Positions 1,691 through 62,480 of a stretch of DNA of 63,247 nt are shown one piece after another. This DNA comes from Octopus bimaculoides (lineage: Eukaryota), in the NCBI RefSeq assembly GCF_001194135.2, contig NC_068990.1:9608094-9671340 (forward strand), read 5' to 3'. Position numbers and translations under genes: made by a program. Below the pieces are notes generated by a model. The model was not told where the DNA came from. It did no database searches and saw nothing but the letters and a program-made list of their open reading frames with translations. Every line of letters starts with the position of its first letter. Within the stretch, counting starts at the first letter, position 1.

Positions 1691-1996
1691 TGAAGTAGTC
1701 GTATGCTGTCAACTTAATGTAATAGTTCCCTGAAGGGAATAATACTACTGTTGGTTAGATCTAGGAAGCTGCACCACTTCCTGTCACCGTTGACACATTT
1801 CCTGTGTCCTTCTGTTTACAAGGTGGAGACAAGCACCTCCACCCAGCTAAGCCTGCATCTCCCCCTTGTAAACGTAAGGACAAAGGAAATGTGTCAAAGC
1901 CGGCAGGAAGTGGTGCAGCTTCCTAGGTCTAACCAACAGTAGTATTATTCCCTTCAGGGGACTGTCGCATTAAGTTGACAGCATACAACTACTTCA
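1691..1996. repeat. Long inverted repeat / foldback element, arms about 139 bp, about 90% identical, spacer about 28 nt
   Basis: 1691-1829 is the reverse complement of 1858-1996, e.g. CTAGGAAGCTGCACCACTTCCTG versus CAGGAAGTGGTGCAGCTTCCTAG. Confidence 0.95.
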
Positions 1997-10811: not shown

Positions 10812-12524
10812 GTGAGTAAAATCATTATAATAATTAGAATCAGACAAATATCGGGTTCGATTTAATCAACTTTTGCCTCGTCTCAAAAAACCGTTGGTCT
10901 TGTGCCAAAATTTGAAAGAATTATCATAATTACTATTAATATTTCTCCATTTATATAATAATGATAATGACTGTAGTTGTGCTGGTTGTACTGCTGCTGC
11001 TGTGATGATGCCGGTAATGATAATGAGGGGGGGGGGAACAGAATGAACATTATTCCAATGACAATATCGTAATGGCGTAGCGTTGAATAGATCAATTTGT
11101 TGCCCAGTATATCTCGTTGGTTGTAGAAAGTGAATTTGTATTGGTGATTTATAATGTTTATGATATCAGTCTCTGGTGAAGTCTTCGATTGAAACATTTC
11201 AAGATTTATTGCTGTTTACGCGATTTAATTTTGGGATGTTATTTGCTTTATTTCCTCAGGAATCATCTCATAATTTTGTTTGTTGAGTAAACACTAAACA
11301 CACACAAACACACACACATGCACACACAAAAACACGCATATGCGTATATATATGTGTATGTATATATGTATATATATATGTATTTATGTATATATGTATA
11401 CACATACGTGTGTATGTTTGTGGCTGTGTGTAATTACACTTTTACCTATATAAATCCATATATCTATATATGTATAAGCATATATGCATGAGTGTATATA
11501 TATATATATATATATATACATATATATGAATATTTGTATGCATTTATGTATACGAATATATATATNNNNNNNNNNNNNNNNNNNNNNNNNNNNNNNNNNN
11601 NNNNNNNNNNNNNNNNNNNNNNNNNNNNNNNNNNNNNNNNNNNNNNNNNNNNNNNNNNNNNNNNNNNNNNNNNNNNNNNNNNNNNNNNNNNNNNNNNNNN
11701 NNNNNNNNNNNNNNNNNNNNNNNNNNNNNNNNNNNNNNNNNNNNNNNNNNNNNNNNNNNNNNNNNNNNNNNNNNNNNNNNNNNNNNNNNNNNNNNNNNNN
11801 NNNNNNNNNNNNNNNNNNNNNNNNNNNNNNNNNNNNNNNNNNNNNATATATATATATATATATATACATATATATGAACATTTATGTTATATAACATATA
11901 AGCACAACGAAAATGAAGATGCACTTGATAGTAAAATCAAGCTACATAGCGAAATAATTACACAGTATATTCTGTGACTTTCCCGTCCGATATCATGTTT
12001 CTAATAGGGATATAATTATAAAAAACAGATGAATATTTGACGCCTTCATCGCTGAAACTGCCAAGACAACCGTATGATGATATTGTTTCGTAGTTTGGAA
12101 ACTGGTTATATACCGAAACTATCAAATCATCACAAATACAAGTAGAATTAATTTCCTTTGTAGATTATTTTCCAAAAATGGAATGTTCAGAAAAGTGCTA
12201 TTATATTAAGCATTCAAATAAATTAGGCGGTGATCATGAGAGCATTGAAAAATTCTTTACGTACCTACTGCGGCTAACTTTATCTTTCATCTTCTCGGGG
12301 TCAATAACATTCAGTGTCAGCGAAGCACTGGGGTGGATGGTATTGAGTAAACAGCTTCTGTTAATGTTGCTGCCCTTGTGCCTAAATGAGAAACCATTGT
12401 TATGGTCCTTATCTTTTATCTTCTACTTGCTTCAGTCAGTAGTCTGTGCCATGCTAGAGCACTGAGTTGCAGAATTTTGGTCAAACGAATCGATGGCATT
12501 ACTGTTTTTTTGTTATATTAATCA

Positions 12525-18310: not shown

Positions 18311-21300
18311 CTCTTTATTATAGTCTCAGATCTATTGCATGGAAGAAATATTTCTCAGTTTCAAAAGTTTGTCATTTTAGGGGCATTGACAGAGAGGCTA
18401 TTACATGGGTGATTTGGCAACGTCATTCTCTATATTATCTTGTATATTTATTATTTTGAGATGTACGGTAGCATTGCAGAAAGATCTTACTGCAATTTCT
18501 TGTAAGACAAGAGATTGTATAGAAGGTTCCATAATAAACAACGAATTGTACATGTAACCTATTCAAAATTAATATCCCAATTTCACTTTTAGACAATCAT
18601 ATTATACATAAAACTTTAAAATTCATTACATCCAAATTCAAACGAAAATATAAAAAGTAGATGAAGATAACTTATAGATAAGGAAATTTGAGTAGCATTA
18701 ATAAAATTGATGTTCAGACGTCTATTAAACGGCGTAGAATGCCAAAGAATTACGAAGCATAGCTATGCAATAAAACAGTAAATTCTAGAATTCTGTATTA
18801 ATTTTGCTTCTCTTGTTTGTTTATTGAAGCATTGTTAATCATAAATTTCGAATATTCAGAAATTGCAACACTTGCTCTTTGCCAATAAATGAAGAATTTT
18901 GAAATTAATGAATTCACCGAAACAAAGGCGTACGCGCGCACACGCACACAAAAATAGATTTATGCTATCCTACACAGAGACACGTATATATTTATAGATA
19001 GACATACAAATATAAATATACAAATATAAATATTTCTAATATATACTTTCGTGAGAAAATATTGTCCTTCATGATTTCTTCTTCGGCATTGACATTGCGT
19101 TTTCCATACCGAGATTAATTGGTGCATGGTTATATGTATGTATGTTTTTTTCTTTGTTCTTGTAGTGCACCTGAGCACTGTATACAACAGTTGCGTTATA
19201 TTTCAATTTCATTATATATATATATATNNNNNNNNNNNNNNNNNNNNNNNNNNNNNNNNNNNNNNNNNNNNNNNNNNNNNNNNNNNNNNNNNNNNNNNNN
19301 NNNNNNNNNNNNNNNNNNNNNNNNNNNNNNNNNNNNNNNNNNNNNNNNNNNNNNNNNNNNNNNNNNNNNNNNNNNNNNNNNNNNNNNNNNNNNNNNNNNN
19401 NNNNNNNNNNNNNNNNNNNNNNNNNNNNNNNNNNNNNNNNNNNNNNNNNNNNNNNNNNNNNNNNNNNNNNNNNNNNNNNNNNNNNNNNNNNNNNNNNNNN
19501 NNNNNNNNNNNNNNNNNNNNNNNNNNNNNNNNNNNNNNNNNNNNNNNNNNNNNNNNNNNNNNNNNNNNNNNNNNNNNNNNNNNNNNNNNNNNNNNNNNNN
19601 NNNNNNNNNNNNNNNNNNNNNNNNNNNNNNNNNNNNNNNNNNNNNNNNNNNNNNNNNNNNNNNNNNNNNNNNNNNNNNNNNNNNNNNNNNNNNNNNNNNN
19701 NNNNNNNNNNNNNNNNNNNNNNNNNNNNNNNNNNNNNNNNNNNNNNNNNNNNNNNNNNNNNNNNNNNNNNNNNNNNNNNNNNNNNNNNNNNNNNNNNNNN
19801 NNNNNNNNNNNNNNNNNNNNNNNNNNNNNNNNNNNNNNNNNNNNNNNNNNNNNNNNNNNNNNNNNNNNNNNNNNNNNNNNNNNNNNNNNNNNNNNNNNNN
19901 NNNNNNNNNNNNNNNNNNNNNNNNNNNNNNNNNNNNNNNNNNNNNNNNNNNNNNNNNNNNNNNNNNNNNNNNNNNNNNNNNNNNNNNNNNNNNNNNNNNN
20001 NNNNNNNNNNNNNNNNNNNNNNNNNNNNNNNNNNNNNNNNNNNNNNNNNNNNNNNNNNNNNNNNNNNNNNNNNNNNNNNNNNNNNNTATATATATAAAAC
20101 AAGTAATATATTCGTAGCCACTTCAATATGCCTGTCAGCTCGAACGGACTCTAATGCGTTTATTTATCTACACACACACACACACACACACATAGATACA
20201 TAATATTTATACTTACAATTGTAAATTATTCACGAAGTTTATTATTTGGCAAACATTCCTGAAGATTAGACATAAACACAACTCAGAAGTATTTGTGAAT
20301 AGAGGAGACTATATTTTTGTTGCACAACTTATCTCTCCAAACATTTTTCTCGTCAATTTCATTTGGTTCCATAGTGTAAACCAAAAAACATTGAAATTGT
20401 TTGTGAAATAATGACCATAAACATTGTGGTCTTTGCGTAATTTGTTATTTGTATATGAAAATAACTGTTATTCGTGTTGCTATTACTATCATTATTATTT
20501 TCTGGACGTTAGATTGCTGAATCGGTCGTAGGATAAAAATTGTTGCATCATGTCTGCAGATAAACTAAGTCTGTTTTATATTTTATACATTCTTGGTCTA
20601 TGCAATAACTACAGTTTGTGAGCTATGTCACTTACATCGACTGTACTTTACCTGACTGCTGTGATGTTGTGCCAAAGATAGAAATCTTTATTTGTATGTT
20701 TTCAAAAGTTTCACGACTTCCTCACTGTCCGCCACATTTTCTTCTTTATTTCTCAGGTGTGTGTGAAAGAGTAAGACTTTTAGGTGGGTGGAAACATAAT
20801 TACAGTGCATCAAATTGGCAGACGTTTTCTGTTTGAGAGTCCAATATTGAACATTTCATCACGATAGGAAGTGACTGAATAGAATATATGTTAGATGTGC
20901 GACCATGCTATTGATTCAAAAGTGTTTTGTGCTGTTTACTCGTCACAGCCAATCTTCATCCGACTGTTACTGCCTCTTTCCACACTTTAAAATATCCTAT
21001 TCAGCAAACACATCTGCTCTTTTGGAAGTGTTTTTAATATCTACAATCAGATTATTGCCGAGTCCTGGAATTCTACGCACGTTTCTAGTAGTACTTCACG
21101 TTTGATTTCATTTGTTCTTGCGCTGCATCTCTGAAAAAAAGATATTACGTAAAGCATTTCGAAGAAATTGCCAAAAGAGATTCTGCAATTCGAACATTCA
21201 GAAAAAAAAAAACTTTCGTGCGCAGGATAGGATTCCGACTTTCATGTGACTTAAATTGCAAGCAAGTGTTATATTTGTCTTTCTTTACTAACTTTCAGAT

Positions 21301-27600: not shown

Positions 27601-27980
27601 CATACTTTATTTGTTTCAATTATTAGGCAACGACCACAGTGGAACACCACCTTGAAGAATTTATATTCTTAAATATCAACCCTTGAACTTGTTTTGTAAA
27701 ACCTGGTACTTATCCTAGCGGTCGCTTTTGAAGAACCACTCGGTTACGTTGACGTAAACACATTAGCACCGGTTATCAAGCGGTTTTGGAGTACAAACAC
27801 AGTCACAAACAAACACGCGCGCACACACATGCACACACACATATCCGACGGGCTTTCAGCTTTCGTATACCAAATCCATTCACAAGGCTCTGGTCAGCCC
27901 GAGGCTATAGTAGAAGACTCTTGCCACGGTGCCTCGCAGTGGGACTGAACTCCGAACCATGTGGTTGGTTAGTAAGCTTA
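27601..27980 (-). mobile_element. SINE family B, near full length
   Basis: CGACGGGCTTTCAG..ACCAAATCCATTCACAAGGC..CCCGAGGCTATAGTAGAAGAC..GCAGTGGGACTGAAC..CCATGTGGTTGG. Confidence 0.9.
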
Positions 27981-33800: not shown

Positions 33801-33992
33801 GGCGCTTGAGTGGATGCGTGGTAAGTAGTTTGCTTAACAGCCACATTGTTCCGAGTTTAGTCCCACTGCGTGGTACCTTGGGAAATTGTTTTCTACTATA
33901 GCCTCGGGCCGATCAGAGCCTTGTGAGTGGATTTGGTAGACGGAAACTGAAAGAAGCCCGTCGTATATATATATATATATATATATATATAT
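33801..33992 (+). mobile_element. SINE family B 5' half running into its internal (TA)n tract and a gap
   Basis: GGCGCTTGAGTGGATGCGTGGTAAGTAG..AGTCCCACTGCGTGG..GGATTTGGTAGACGGAAACTGAAAGAAGCCCGTCGTATATAT. Confidence 0.92.
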
Positions 33993-45469: not shown

Positions 45470-45779
45470 TTCTTTTATTCTTTTATTCTTTTATTCTTTT
45501 ATTCTTTTATTCTTTTATTCTTTTATTCTTTTATTCTTTTACTTGTCTCAGGCATTTGACTTGGGCCACGCTGGAGCACCAGCTTGAAGGATTTTTTTCA
45601 CTCGAATATGGACCGTAATCCATATTCGTTCTTTGCCGAACCGCTAAGTTACGGTAACGTAAACACACCAACGACGTTTGTCAAGCGGTAATAGCGGTAG
45701 AAAGACAAACACAACGACAAACACACATAAATACATACACAAACACACAGACACACAGACACACACACACAGACACACA

Positions 45780-54110: not shown

Positions 54111-54229
54111 CTACGTATACTCAGACAGTTCAATAAATTTTTATTCACGTCAATTTTAGAAGCATTTACTTATAATAAAACATTTATAATTGATATATTT
54201 CTCTGGTTAAGGAAAAAAAAAAAGAAAGA

Positions 54230-55110
54230 AAATTGAAATTGTGTCGAGACACCAAACATCTTTTTTTTTATTTTTTAGCTAATTTGAAGGTGCTGAATCT
54301 GAAAATGACCTCACTTTTTCTTGGCCAGCTACCGTCTATGCTGTACAGAAATGCTTCATTTTTGAAAAAAAAAGAAGCATTTTCTTCATCTGTCTTCTGT
54401 ATATTTGATATTGAATGATGGCAATATTTCTCAAAGTAAAATCGTAGAAACCTCTCACTTCATATTTGGTCTGCTTATTGGGAAATACTATTTTTGCAAT
54501 AACAATCAGCCCCTAAGTCTTTAAAAATAACCAAGACCAACAAGAATTATCATGAAATCATTAAATAAACTAACAGTAGGAATAAAACTTTCGTGAACAT
54601 AAGAACTATGGTAAAAATTTTCTTTCTTGATTGTCAGTCATGTTCAATGTTATTTAAATCCCTTTTGATACACCAGAAGTAGTCAGCCCTCATTCGTTTG
54701 TCCCACCGTCCCCGGTAGCGCTCTTCCATTGTTTTGATATCCTGATGGAATCGTTCTCCTTGTTCATCACTCATATCGCCGCAAGTATCCGGAAATTTAT
54801 CTAGATGGCTATGTAAAAAAATAACCTTAATACTCATATTAGCGCCTATGTCCTGTAGAATTTTCAACAGCTTTTCCACTAACTCCTTGTATGTTTCGGC
54901 CCGGTGATTGCCTAAGAAGTTTTTCACCACGTCCAGAAACAATGTCCAAGCGCGTAATTCCAAGTCATTCATTGAATTAACAAATTCATCACCCTTAATG
55001 AGTTTCCTAATAACAGGACCATCAAATACTCCTGCTTTGAGTTTTTCGGTGCTAAGTCCTGGAAATGATTTACATATATACTCAAAACATTTACTTTCTT
55101 TAGTATTAAA
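54230..55110 (-). mobile_element. 3' part of a DNA transposon; transposase C-terminus (54634-55107), most like CMC/Chapaev3
   Basis: Open reading CFEYICKSFPGLSTEKLKAGVFDGPVIRKLIK..MNDLELRAW..VVKNFLGN..MSIKVIFLHSHLDKFP..GDMSDEQGERFHQDIKTMEERYRGRW..ADYFWCIKRD. The transposase call is firm; the family label is from memory. Confidence 0.8.
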
Positions 55111-55559
55111 AAAATGACTCAGATGATCGTGAGGCTACCACAGTAAGTTCCTCTTACATTCTCGGATATCACTCCAGTTGATAATTACATTGGATTATCA
55201 GAGTGATTCGTTTATCATTTTCCATTTATTTTAATCTTTATTAACTCATCAACACTTTAAACAAATCAATCAATAATATTATTCACATTACATTGTTTAT
55301 GGCTTCTTGTCAACATTTCGCTAACCTGTCCATAATTTGACGGTAGAAATCCATGATTTTGTCGGCAGGTATTGACTCATAGTATTCATCAATCTACGTT
55401 TCAGAAAATGCACTCTGAATTACCCGTGTCTATTCCCCAACATTTTCTCTCTCCCTGTCTCACTTTGAAAAATCAGGATATATTCAGGAGTCTACTCAAA
55501 TAAAAAAAAAAACACTTAAATTACTCCATTCTCAAAAAGGGCAACCTCTCTTGTCCCAC

Positions 55560-57348: not shown

Positions 57349-58390
57349 CTGGACAAATTTCGATGGGTGTCAGAGATACTAAATTTAATCTATCACTGCA
57401 ATATATATTTAATAAAAGGCGCTAACAGGAGCTCTCCCTTATCATAGGAAATATCTTAATTAGTACAGGCTTATTTCTACTTGCAGTAATCCCTCAATTA
57501 AGAGTCTCCCGCTTTATTATGCCTTAATTTAATGGCATTAATTTAATTATGAAAAAAAAAGAGTAATTAATTACTCAAGTATTGCGAAGCATTCCTAATG
57601 ATTACTATTAACGTTTAAACACGAGGCTGAGCCCCAATAATATACATGTGAGTGTTTGTTCATTTATTCGGCCATTTCGTTTGTTTACGTTTCAAAGGCG
57701 AGCGCGTATAGTGTACGCATGTTTCCTCCGCTGTCTTTTAAAGTCAATACATTTGGGTTACTCCATTATGAGAAAATTTGAAATGGAAGATCTAGCAATG
57801 GTATCTCATGTTTATGTCTTTATTCACACTGTATACAACAATGCCATCACATATATTCAAAATATATTGCTAATCAGGTGCACCTCAGTGTTTCTACAAA
57901 TAATATGAATGATGTTTTTCAATTTCACAACAAAGAGTTCACGAACAAGACCTTCTTGAAAAGGAGGTACTTTATGACAAATCAGAACTGTATGTAACAA
58001 TATTTTGTTTCTTCCTACATTCTCACTGACTTGCGGAAGCTTTGTTTTACATATTCAAAGCAGGATTGACAATTGAAGCGTCAATATTCAATTAGGAAAA
58101 AAGTTGGCGCAGACCTAAACATTACAAAGGAACATTTGAGTCCTCCCTCAAGTGAATCAGATAAAACGAGAGGCAGTGTGACATCATATAAAGGATATAA
58201 TTTGAGCGTTAAAGAAACATTGAATAATGAATAATATCCACAGAAATTTGCCTATTATTTGAAATGATTTTATGTATCTAATTATACTTAAATTATGCTT
58301 TATTATTCCTGATTTAATATAAGAATATTTTATGTGAAATCAAATAATCCAGAATGTAAGCACATTTTATAGCACTAAATCCCACACGAA

Positions 58391-58610
58391 ATAATCTCAC
58401 TTAAAGATTGTTCTCTTAAATTATAAACAAATGGAAACAATTAAATCGTTAATCCCAGGTATTGCCGTATAATCCAAATTCTTAAGTTTAATAAGGGCAT
58501 TCCCTTATTAAACTTAAGAATTTGGATTATACGGCAATACCTGGGATTAACGATTTAATTGTTTCAATTTGTTTAGTATTTAAGAGAGCAAACTTTAAGT
58601 GAGAGATTAT
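58391..58610. repeat. Hairpin with a 64-bp perfect stem, 4-nt loop and about 44 bp of imperfect outer stem
   Basis: 58434-58497 is the exact reverse complement of 58502-58565; loop CATT. Confidence 0.97.
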
Positions 58611-59196
58611 GCTATTCTCAAAATTAAACTTTTGACCCTTCACTGTAGAAGGAAGAGCTACAAGACTGAATGGTTTTGCATAACCCTGGATCCTTAGTTC
58701 ATCAGAAATTTTAAATACAGTGTTGTTAATAGCTTTCATCACATTCAGATAAGGTTTATAGTAATCCATGGAAATGGCATAGAATAAAAATCGATTGTAA
58801 GAACTTCTCTCAACTTGATACAAGATAACTCTCTTGTCATAATGGAAATGAAATGTACAGCATTAAAATCTCTGATCAGTTGTGTCCTGTTTTCCGAATC
58901 CTTTTCGTATGGAGTAACCCTATTTCTGAATTTAACGATGCGAATGATTGCAAATAAATCATTCTTAACCAGAATCAATGCCGGATTACAAGTAGGACAT
59001 TTATACGATTTAAATCCAAATTTATCCCGTTGCTTATCAACTAGTGATTGCTATCTAAATTGAAAGCTCGCCATTTTCTTTGAATAAGTGTATCCTTTTA
59101 CTGAATAAATATTTTCCAAGTCTGTTGGATACAATGATAGAAGTGAGAAAATCCCCAAATCCATAGGTTATCCAATGAAACTTATATGCAAAACTG
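58527..59196 (-). pseudogene. Decayed large coding exon of unknown family
   Basis: Strong acceptor TTCTTTTCTCTCCAG(CAG); about 220 codons readable with two in-frame stops and one frameshift: VLHISFIG*PMDLGIFSLL..SFQFR*QSLVDKQRDKFGFKSYKCPTCNPALILVKND..HFISIMTRE / YQVERSSYNRFLFYAISMDYYKPY..IPGIAV*. Confidence 0.5.
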
Positions 59197-59247
59197 CTGG
59201 AGAGAAAAGAATTATTTAAGACTGTAAACATACAAAANNNNNNNNNN

Positions 59248-59741: not shown

Positions 59742-60028
59742 ATGCTGGAGCACCGCCTTATTTTTTGTAAGCCTAGTACTTATTCTATCGGGTCTTTTGC
59801 CGAACTGCTAAGTTACAGGGACATAAACACACGAACATCGGTTGTCATGCGATAGTGGGCTGTGGACAAACATACACACGCAAATACACATGCAACTACC
59901 AAATCCATTTACAAGGATTTGGTCGGCCCGAGGCTACCGTAGAAGACATTTTGTGACACGCAGTGGTACTGAACCCGGAGCCCTGTGGTTGGGAAACAAA
60001 TTTCTTACCAGACAGTCACTCGTGCGAC
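59742..60028 (-). mobile_element. SINE family B
   Basis: TGCTGGAGCACCGCC..AAGCCTAGTACTTATTCTATCGG..TTGGTCGGCCCGAGGCTA..GCAGTGGTACTGAACCCGG. Confidence 0.92.
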
Positions 60029-61211: not shown

Positions 61212-61748
61212 CAGGGGTTGGACAAAAAATGGAAACACAGCATCATAGCATCATAATTTTGAATTATCTATAAAACTGTCAAAAGCTTGTTCATCTTTAT
61301 GTTTTTTGGATTTATTATTAGTGTTGCTTAATATGTTTTGCTAAAATCGCTGTTTCTTTTCAGATATCATCAGAAAATAGTAATTAAAATCCATTAAAAT
61401 GACAGATCTGCCGGACTTTCAAAGAGGTCAAATTGTTGGTGCTCGTATAGCAGGTGCTAGCGTAATGAAAACAGCCGAAATGTTTGGTGTATCAAGAAGT
61501 ACTATCTCGAAGGTAATGACAACCTTTGAGAAAGAGGGAAAAAACCTCGTCATCGAAACAAAACTCCGGATGAAAACAAAAACTTTCAGATAGGGACCAT
61601 CGTACGCTTACGCGAATTGTTAGAAAGGGTCACAAATGTACAGCACCCAAAATTACTGCAGAGCTTAATGACCAACTCGAGAACCCAGTCTCAACAAAAA
61701 TTGTTTCCCGAGAGCTGCACAAAGCTGGATTTCACGGCAGGGCTGCAT
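61212..61748 (+). mobile_element. Tc1-like element, 5' part (TIR plus transposase DNA-binding domain, one frameshift, one stop)
   Basis: TA followed by CAGGGGTTGGACAAAAAATGGAAAC TIR; MTDLPDFQRGQIVGARIAGASVMKTAEMFGVSRSTISKVMTTFEKEG then LSDRDHRTLTRIVRKGHKCTAPKITAELN..VS..LHKAGFHGRA. Confidence 0.92.
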
Positions 61749-62264
61749 GAACACTACTTTCAAAAACAATATCTTTCGCGTTCGGCTGCTCATATTCAGC
61801 TGAACTGACAGACTTGCATTCCCATGAAAGAGAGATGAAAAATGCTTAACGAAAAATTAATTCAGCATGTAACTGTTGAGAGTAGATCGGTTAGAGTAAG
61901 ATGTGTTTTTTAAGAAAACCAAGGAATATATAAAAAATTACACATTACAACTTGCTTTTAATTCATAAGACGTGACAAGTTGTAAACCTTTGGGTCAAAG
62001 AATTGCAGTTTTGCTAATATATTTAGTTGTCTTCTTGATGGAAGGAAGAAATGGTTGTAATAAGCTTAATGTTAACAACATTCAAATTAAATATGTATAT
62101 ATCATCATTATTTTTAATCTTTGTGTACACATCTACATATATAGGCGTAGATGTGTATATATAAGTGTGTGTATGTGAGCACACACACATATATATATAT
62201 ATATGTGTGTGCGTGCGTTCGTGTATGCGTGTGTGCATGTGTGTGTATTTCATGCGTGTCTTTT

Positions 62265-62480
62265 GTGTGTGTGATTGTCCACCACCAACGCTTGACAATT
62301 GGTGTTGGTGTGTTTATGTCATCATAACTTAGTGGTTCGGCAAAATGACGTATGTAATAAGTATAGTACTTAACAAAAATTAAGTACTGGGGTCGATTTC
62401 TTCGATTAATAAAATTCTTCAAGATGATTCTCCAGTATACCCGCAGACTGAACCTAATAAAATTTAAAAAATAAAGACAG
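62265..62480 (+). mobile_element. SINE family B 3' half
   Basis: ACGCTTGACAATTGGTGTTGGTGTGTTTATGTC..TAACTTAGTGGTTCGGCAAAA..AAGTACTGGGGTCGATTT. Confidence 0.85.

What the first reader, a model, noticed from the sequence alone, without database searches (positions are those of the whole stretch)
58391..58610. 64-bp perfect hairpin made from an inverted duplication of a coding-like exon end
Seen: the inner stem has 64 of 64 pairs with a 4-nt loop, while the outer 44 bp carry 5 mismatches and a 2-nt indel. The right arm is the last part of the minus-strand reading frame (..SHLKFALLNTKQIETIKSLIPGIAV*), so the left arm is its antisense copy. No TSD or transposon-like termini are evident. Inference: a fold-back duplication truncated the gene, and the inner stem has since been kept perfect by selection or intra-hairpin conversion. 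If transcribed it would be a hairpin-RNA/endo-siRNA or miRNA source complementary to intact paralogues, or an ADAR substrate, which matters in coleoids with heavy A-to-I editing.
Basis: partly seen in the sequence, partly recalled or inferred. Interest (0 to 1): 0.7.

Follow-up and report, generated by a model that had tools for sequence, protein, structure and literature searches.

The report
Single-copy non-coding 220-bp near-perfect palindrome
The hairpin-forming inverted repeat is really in the sequence, but the "gene end" it was said to copy has no support, so it is most likely an ordinary young inverted duplication or a small palindromic transposon relic in non-coding animal DNA.

Summary
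The arms are 58391-58497 and 58502-58610, joined by the loop CATT. The inner 64 of 64 positions pair. All 5 mismatches and the 2-nt indel lie in the outer 43-45 nt. The predicted fold is far beyond chance (z about -29).

- **No gene.** The minus-strand frame has no Pfam domain. It has no relative among 5.8 billion protein clusters or 1.84 billion representatives. At 111 codons it is ordinary for this AT-rich window, which holds 20 stop-free stretches that long against about 9 expected by chance.
- **No transposon signature.** The window holds no second copy. There is no target-site duplication beyond a possible TA, and the ends match no canonical transposon termini.
- **No known RNA family.** No Rfam family reaches its gathering score.
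- **Inner/outer contrast is modest.** It gives p about 0.003-0.024, and it was noticed after the fact.

Best reading: a real, single-copy, non-coding quasi-palindrome made by local fold-back or template-switch synthesis. Its core was either made later or re-perfected by quasi-palindrome correction. A palindromic MITE is the main rival, and a library or assembly artefact at the centre cannot be excluded.

Transcription, small RNAs, editing and the source species were not testable here. Interest is low.

The parts
58391..58497 (.). Left arm of the inverted repeat (107 nt). The outer 43 nt (58391-58433) are imperfect; the inner 64 nt (58434-58497) are perfect.
58498..58501 (.). 4-nt spacer/loop CATT, closed by GGG/CCC
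58502..58610 (.). Right arm (109 nt). The inner 64 nt (58502-58565) are perfect. The outer 45 nt (58566-58610) carry 5 mismatches and a 2-nt insertion relative to the left arm.
58434..58565 (.). Perfect 132-bp palindromic core (64 + 4 + 64)
58527..58862 (-). Stop-free frame (111 codons plus stop; the TTG-start ORF is 58527-58823) that runs into the right arm. It is judged a chance open frame, not an exon.

Best explanation
This is a real, single-copy, non-coding quasi-palindrome. It was created by a local fold-back (snap-back / intramolecular template-switch) DNA synthesis event, not by transposition and not from a gene.

Inferred mechanism:
1. During replication or break repair, a nascent 3' end folded back on itself at a tiny inverted microhomology (GGG / 4 nt / CCC).
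2. It copied its own strand, producing an inverted duplicate of about 108 nt with a 4-nt turn.
3. The arms then diverged; the outer parts now differ by about 12%.
4. A second intramolecular template switch, the classical 'quasi-palindrome correction', recopied the inner 64 nt of one arm from the other. This left a perfect 132-bp core.

Alternatively, there was one recent event and the outward clustering of the differences is chance. Nothing indicates a function. The expected consequences are structural: hairpin or cruciform potential and local fragility. The locus would form dsRNA only if it happens to be transcribed.

Shown: the anatomy, the single copy within the window, and the absence of coding, transposon or RNA-family signatures. 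Inferred: the mechanism and the order of events.
For: - **Anatomy.** Exact anatomy, with sharp ends to the complementarity.
- **No TSD.** No direct repeat flanks any plausible end.
- **No other copy.** Neither the arm nor its terminal 27-mer recurs in the 63-kb window (blastn word 7, best E = 0.15; pattern search with 3 mismatches finds only the two arms). None is found in about 40 kb of other animal loci.
- **No subrepeats.** The arms contain no tandem repeats.
- **Difference pattern.** All differences lie outside the inner 64 positions. P = 0.024, 0.009 or 0.003 for 4, 5 or 6 events, and P(0 of 64 differences at the outer rate) = 4e-4.
- **Turn.** The 4-nt loop is closed by a 3-bp GC clamp.
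- **Assembly position.** The palindrome lies inside a 14.8-kb gap-free contig with different unique flanks. It is the only long perfect palindrome in the window.
- **Published mechanism.** Template switching makes perfect stems in one event, converts quasi-palindromes into perfect palindromes and homogenises inverted-repeat arms (PMC8794818; PMC10710096; PMC8604942 and PMC13100816, abstracts). Pol theta performs snap-back templated extension in cis during end joining (PMC4912351).
Against: - There is no outgroup or second haplotype, so neither the ancestral state nor the direction of copying is known.
- A 64-nt (or 108-nt) copied tract is long for described short template switches. The largest pattern in the rRNA study was 59 bp.
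- The two-step history is less parsimonious than one event plus chance, and the clustering statistic is post hoc.
- Copy number was tested only in 63 kb, so a low- or medium-copy MITE family is not excluded.
- A TA dinucleotide on both sides (58392-58393 and 58608-58609) would fit a Tc1/mariner-type insertion.
Confidence: 0.45

Rival explanations
1. This is a copy of a palindromic MITE: a non-autonomous DNA transposon made almost entirely of its two terminal inverted repeats, like human MADE1. It would have been inserted by a Tc1/mariner-type transposase at a TA. The imperfect outer part would be inherited from the family's imperfect ends.
For: - It is a discrete 220-bp unit with sharp symmetric ends.
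- TA is present just inside both ends of the complementarity (sequence).
- The same window holds another, unrelated 306-bp palindromic element (1691-1996) and a Tc1/mariner-type HTH remnant (61399-61593).
- Octopus repeat annotation lists Tc1-Mariner as the commonest TIR class and 65 MITE families among recently active elements (PMC13282606). This bears on the case only if the window is from an octopus.
Against: - No second copy exists in the window, even of the terminal 27-mer at 3 mismatches.
- There is no TSD other than the uninformative palindromic TA.
- The termini (ATCTCAC...) do not resemble canonical Tc1/mariner, hAT, piggyBac, PIF or CACTA ends (recalled consensus sequences, not tested against a library).
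- No eukaryotic TE library or source genome was available, so the decisive test was not run.
Confidence: 0.3
2. The perfect centre is a sequencing-library or assembly artefact. The real locus would be an imperfect inverted repeat, perhaps with a longer spacer, and snap-back end-repair products or mis-assembly made the middle look perfect.
For: - The window is a short-read scaffold: 13 N-runs, most of them abutting microsatellites.
- Library preparation at natural inverted repeats and near-palindromes produces chimeric reads in which mismatched bases are rewritten to the complement of the other arm (PMC10908179).
- Perfect palindromes are hard to sequence through (general knowledge).
Against: - Such artefact reads are low-frequency and should not win a consensus.
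- The palindrome is internal to a 14.8-kb contig with distinct unique flanks, and the two outer arms differ, so both arms exist independently.
- No other long perfect palindrome occurs in the window, so this is not a systematic assembler behaviour.
Confidence: 0.1
3. A fold-back duplication truncated a protein-coding gene, and the hairpin is maintained by selection as a source of hairpin RNA, endo-siRNA or miRNA against intact paralogues, or as an ADAR substrate.
For: - An open frame does run from the right flank into the right arm.
- The RNA fold is extremely stable.
- miRNA-precursor models give sub-threshold hits.
Against: - The frame has no homologue and no domain, and its length is what chance gives.
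- A concatenate of 39 open frames from 55.3-59.7 kb also found nothing.
- No paralogue was found anywhere, so there is no known target.
- All Rfam hits are 20-50 bits below gathering score and occur on both strands. The whole window has no hit at gathering score.
- A perfect stem of about 107 bp is unlike animal pre-miRNAs (general knowledge).
Confidence: 0.05

Closest known systems
Quasi-palindrome-associated template-switch mutations / short template-switch mutations (Ripley model; Löytynoja and Goldman; Mönttinen and Löytynoja)
   Same: A reverse-complement copy lies next to its source with a very short loop. The stem is perfect, as if made in a single event, and an imperfect inverted repeat is perfected over part of its length (PMC8794818, PMC10710096, PMC8604942).
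   Different: The perfect tract here (64 nt per arm) is longer than most described events. No ancestral sequence is available to show the four switch points.
Palindromic MITEs such as human MADE1 (Hsmar1-derived, source of the mir-548 family)
   Same: A short non-coding unit consisting almost wholly of two inverted arms around a few central bases, with TA at both ends possible.
   Different: No other copy, no demonstrable TSD and no recognisable superfamily termini. The unit is 220 bp, against about 80 bp for MADE1 (recalled from memory).
Hairpin-RNA (hpRNA) endo-siRNA loci of Drosophila, and the long inverted repeats catalogued in LIRBase (6.6 million in 424 eukaryotic genomes, PMC8728187)
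   Same: A long, nearly perfect inverted repeat with a short spacer that would give dsRNA if transcribed.
   Different: There is no evidence of transcription, small RNAs or a target gene. The arms are shorter than the classical hpRNA loci.
Pol theta snap-back templated insertions at repaired double-strand breaks (PMC4912351)
   Same: An inverted copy of adjacent sequence primed from a few bases of microhomology.
   Different: Described insertions are mostly a few to tens of nucleotides, whereas this one is about 108 nt.

Membership tests
Protein-coding exon / truncated gene | Detectable homologues or a known domain | tested here: not met
   Pfam finds nothing. The 5.8-billion cluster search finds nothing. 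The 1.84-billion HMMER scan gives only a translated tandem repeat at E = 3e-4.
Protein-coding exon / truncated gene | Open frame longer than composition alone gives | tested here: not met
   The window has 20 stop-free stretches of at least 111 codons. Markov simulations give a mean of 8.9 and a maximum of 16.
MITE (non-autonomous TIR transposon) | Terminal inverted repeats; small and non-coding | tested here: met
   Arms of 107 and 109 nt, 220 bp in total, with no coding signal.
MITE (non-autonomous TIR transposon) | Target-site duplication flanking the ends | tested here: inconclusive
   No direct repeat of at least 4 bp at any plausible end. Only a palindromic TA lies inside the last 3 nt of the repeat, and in 68% A+T DNA this is uninformative.
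MITE (non-autonomous TIR transposon) | Multiple dispersed copies | tested here: inconclusive
   No second copy in the 63-kb window or in about 40 kb of other loci. Exact 22- and 24-mers are absent from the metagenome and viral collections. The source genome was not available.
Foldback (FB-type) elements | Long inverted arms built of tandem subrepeats | tested here: not met
   Tandem Repeats Finder reports no array between 58391 and 58610.
Known miRNA / ncRNA families (Rfam 15) | Score at or above the family's gathering threshold | tested here: not met
   The best hit is mir-580 at 60.8 bits against a threshold of 83, and MIR7696 hits both strands at 58.9 and 58.5 bits against a threshold of 83. 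The window has no hit at gathering score.
hpRNA / endo-siRNA locus | Transcription and 21-23-nt small RNAs from the stem; a target gene | not testable with these tools
   No expression data. No paralogue was found.
Template-switch / quasi-palindrome correction product | Reverse-complement copy adjacent to its source with a short loop | tested here: met
Template-switch / quasi-palindrome correction product | A cluster of changes, relative to the ancestral sequence, explained by one copying event | not testable with these tools
   No orthologous or ancestral sequence could be retrieved.
Parvovirus/densovirus-type terminal hairpin (endogenous viral element) | Adjacent NS1/VP coding remnants | tested here: not met
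   Six-frame Pfam scan of 57400-59240 finds nothing.

The most novel reading that the evidence does not exclude
The locus is a very young hairpin-RNA gene in the making. It now yields endo-siRNAs or serves as a hyper-editing ADAR substrate, with its perfection maintained by recurrent arm-to-arm templated correction.
Probability: 0.04. Interest if true: 0.55.

Novelty: new member of a known kind. Interest (0 to 1): 0.17.

Why it matters
As it stands it matters little. Long inverted repeats with short spacers number in the millions across eukaryotic genomes (LIRBase, PMC8728187). This one shows no sign of coding, of transposition, or of belonging to a known RNA family.

Its modest value is as a clean example of a quasi-palindrome with a perfect core and diverged outer arms. 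That is the footprint predicted by template-switch correction models. If real, a 132-bp perfect palindrome with a 4-nt spacer is also a candidate fragile or cruciform site, and a place where short-read assemblies should be checked.

It would become interesting only if population or sister-species data showed recurrent re-perfection, or if small-RNA or editing data showed that it is processed.

Tried and rejected
- **Homology of the open frame.** Pfam, the word-indexed search of 5.8 billion clusters and exhaustive HMMER against 1.84 billion representatives gave nothing. The single hit, P0001, is a translated satellite.
- **Six-frame Pfam of 57400-59240.** Nothing. The first attempt with window references failed on stop codons.
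- **Reaching the same locus in another assembly.**
  - Exact-protein look-ups of the two nearest ORFs were not on record.
  - A concatenate of 39 open frames from 55.3-59.7 kb had no hit.
  - Relatives of the TE-derived ORF at 54.6 kb led to ENA assembly ERZ21867824 and to TARA contigs. These share only that TE with the window, at 67-83% identity, and have no copy of the arm. They are therefore not usable as orthologues.
- **Exact-pattern scans.** Two metagenome scans and one viral-contig scan gave no matches. A full-text search of papers for three 21-mers gave no matches.
- **Rfam.** Only sub-threshold generic hairpin hits. No tRNA or tRNA-SINE signal.
- **Weaker complementarity beyond the arms.** None, so there is no outward gradient of divergence.
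- **TSDs at all end offsets.** None valid.
- **Pfam on the ten longest clean open frames of the window, to find a host gene.** Nothing.
- **Octopus vulgaris repeat paper.** Its supplement holds no consensus library to compare against.
- **Rejected readings.** A parvovirus-like ITR (no viral genes nearby), a Foldback element (no subrepeats) and a haplotype fold-back mis-join (the flanks are not complementary).

Full report
**1. The observation**

The sequence at 58391-58610 is a near-perfect palindrome, as described. The repeat finder gives ungapped arms 58395-58497 and 58502-58604: 103 nt, 95% complementary, 4 nt apart. Walking outward from the centre gives 64 consecutive complementary pairs around the loop CATT (58498-58501). 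Mismatches follow at positions 65, 75, 76, 87 and 91.

A gapped alignment adds a 2-nt indel and four more pairs. The arms are then 58391-58497 and 58502-58610. The perfect core is 58434-58565 (132 bp).

The fold is far beyond chance. As RNA it is -151.9 kcal/mol against -39.1 +/- 3.9 for dinucleotide shuffles (z = -28.9). As DNA it is -102.8 against -15.5 +/- 3.0 (z = -28.9). Complementarity ends abruptly: 400 nt of flank on either side align no better than shuffles, scoring 15 against a mean of 12.9 and a maximum of 19. The quoted peptide is the end of minus-strand ORF 58527-58823.

**2. Is the right arm the end of a coding exon?**

No evidence says so.

- The stop-to-stop frame is 111 codons (58530-58862, minus). 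Pfam finds nothing in it or in the neighbouring frames. It finds nothing in all six frames of 57400-59240.
- The word-indexed search of 5.8 billion protein clusters found no relative at E <= 0.1.
- An exhaustive HMMER scan of 1.84 billion representatives returned one protein at E = 3e-4, matched in seven stretches. That protein is the translation of a tandem repeat, a roughly 48-residue unit repeated many times. The match is spurious.
- The frame's length is unremarkable. The window has 20 stop-free stretches of at least 111 codons. Second-order Markov simulations of the same composition give 8.9 on average and up to 16.
- No gene with this product is on record.

The 'coding-like exon end', the 'truncated gene' and the 'intact paralogues' are therefore unsupported.

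**3. Context**

The window is 32% G+C. It has 13 runs of N, and most of them abut (TA)n or similar arrays, as expected of a short-read scaffold of an AT-rich animal genome.

It is animal DNA. A TE-derived ORF 3.4 kb upstream (54634-54972, minus) has 425 relatives. The named ones come from a firefly, a sea spider and a tunicate. A Tc1/mariner-type HTH remnant lies at 61399-61593. No Rfam family reaches its gathering score anywhere in the window, and no tRNA is found. The ten longest clean open frames have no Pfam domain.

The palindrome lies inside a gap-free 14.8-kb contig (44458-59237), 627 bp from its right end.

**4. Is it a transposon?**

The arm has no second copy in the window. With blastn at word size 7, the best other hit has E = 0.15. 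The terminal 27-mer with up to 3 mismatches matches only the two arms, against 0 expected. There is no copy in about 40 kb of other animal loci fetched in passing.

No direct repeat of at least 4 bp flanks any plausible pair of ends. The flanks are ...CCCACACGAA| and |GCTATTCTCA.... The only candidate is a TA on each side (58392-58393 and 58608-58609). This TA is itself palindromic and lies inside the last bases of the complementarity, so in 68% A+T DNA it carries almost no weight. The ends (ATCTCAC...) do not resemble the canonical termini I recall for Tc1/mariner, hAT, piggyBac, PIF/Harbinger or CACTA elements. That comparison is from memory and was not tested against a library. The arms contain no tandem subrepeats, so this is not a Foldback-type element.

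Several points favour a transposon.
- The unit is discrete.
- The same window holds another, unrelated 306-bp palindromic element at 1691-1996.
- MITEs and Tc1/mariner elements are documented in octopus genomes (PMC13282606).

A 63-kb sample cannot exclude a low- or medium-copy family. I tried to reach other assemblies of the same locus or genome and failed. Exact 22- and 24-mers from the stem are absent from the metagenome and viral collections and from the paper library.

**5. The perfect core against the imperfect outer stem**

All differences lie in the outer 43 of 107 aligned positions. If differences fell at random, the probability is 0.024, 0.009 or 0.003 for 4, 5 or 6 independent events. 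That is suggestive, but the pattern was noticed first and tested afterwards.

At the outer mismatch rate (5/43 = 11.6%, Jukes-Cantor 0.126), a clean run of 64 has probability 4e-4. The 95% upper bound on core divergence is 4.6%. The core is therefore probably younger than the outer stem, but one recent event plus chance is not excluded.

**6. Mechanism**

The published template-switch literature describes this class of outcome.
- A nascent strand that loops back on itself, or briefly copies the opposite strand, creates a reverse-complement repeat able to form a perfect hairpin in one event.
- It homogenises and expands imperfect inverted-repeat arms in yeast (PMC8604942 and PMC13100816, abstracts).
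- Pol theta can do the same in cis ('snap-back') during end joining (PMC4912351).

The centre here, GGG-CATT-CCC, offers the 3-bp microhomology and 4-nt turn such a snap-back needs. This is an inference from the sequence.

I therefore favour the following history. A local fold-back produced the arms of about 108 nt, the arms diverged, and a second intramolecular switch recopied the inner 64 nt. The weak points of this reading are:
- The copied tract is long for described short switches; the largest pattern in the rRNA study was 59 bp.
- There is no outgroup to polarise the events.
- The MITE alternative remains untested at genome scale.

**7. Artefact?**

Library preparation at natural inverted repeats produces chimeric reads in which mismatches are rewritten to the complement of the other arm, but at low allele fraction (PMC10908179).

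Several points argue against an artefact.
- The two outer arms differ from each other.
- The flanks are unique and unrelated.
- The palindrome is internal to a long contig.
- No other long perfect palindrome exists in the window.

A spurious perfect centre is still possible at about 10%. Only spanning long reads or PCR can settle it.

**8. RNA readings**

At relaxed thresholds several miRNA-precursor models hit the centre: mir-580 at 60.8 bits, MIR7696 at 58.9 and MIR1512 at 45.6. All are 20-50 bits below their gathering scores, and MIR7696 and MIR1888 hit both strands almost equally. This is how covariance models of long perfect hairpins score any perfect hairpin, and it is not membership.

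An almost perfect stem of about 107 bp is unlike animal pre-miRNAs. If transcribed it would look more like a Dicer or ADAR dsRNA substrate (general knowledge). Transcription, small RNAs and editing cannot be examined here.

**9. Verdict**

The feature is real in the assembly and was accurately described. Its most likely nature is an ordinary, young, non-coding inverted duplication, with a palindromic MITE as the main rival. The gene-truncation and functional-RNA interpretations are not supported. It is a new member of a known kind, of low interest unless genome-wide, population or expression data change the picture.

Noticed in passing
window 1691-1996: A second, unrelated 306-bp palindromic element: arms of 139 nt (1691-1829 and 1858-1996), a 28-nt spacer, about 90% complementary. 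Its 14 mismatches are spread along the whole arm, and several sit at CG versus TG/CA sites. It is single-copy in the window and has no clear TSD. It looks like an older MITE-like or fold-back unit, and it contrasts with the centre-perfect pattern of the finding.
   Followed up: partly
window 54217-55134 (minus strand): A TE-derived open frame (166 codons stop-free; the ATG ORF is 54634-54972). It has 425 homologues at E < 1e-5 across animals; the named hits are a firefly, a sea spider and a tunicate. No Pfam family covers it, so this is a widespread but uncatalogued transposon protein domain.
   Followed up: partly
loci L001, L002, L009 (ENA ERZ21867824 contigs ctg115896l, ctg95139l, ctg117371l): An ENA assembly filed among metagenome assemblies holds long (52-179 kb), AT-rich, animal-like contigs. 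They carry the same TE at 81-83% DNA identity, and one has a faint cadherin hit nearby. These are probably host-genome contigs of an unidentified animal. They share no other repeat with the window.
   Followed up: partly
window 61399-61593 (+): A 64-aa ORF with HTH_23/HTH_28 matches (E = 2e-7 and 1e-6), typical of the N-terminus of a Tc1/mariner-type transposase. It is a decayed DNA-transposon remnant.
   Followed up: no
window 59757-59992, with copies at 27868-27968, 33829-33939, 45632-45728 and 62256-62384: A short dispersed repeat (75-79% identity, both orientations), often next to (TA)n arrays and assembly gaps. It is SINE-like, but no tRNA-like head was detected.
   Followed up: no
window N-runs, e.g. 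11566-11845, 19228-20086, 59238-59247: There are 13 assembly gaps. Most directly abut (TA)n, (TG)n or poly-A tracts, and two are exactly 10 N. This is the mark of a short-read scaffold that breaks at microsatellites.
   Followed up: yes
protein P0001 (representative library): The only 'homologue' of the open frame is a 444-aa predicted protein that is plainly the translation of a roughly 48-residue tandem DNA repeat. It shows how satellite translations in the protein library can give marginal multi-stretch hits.
   Followed up: yes
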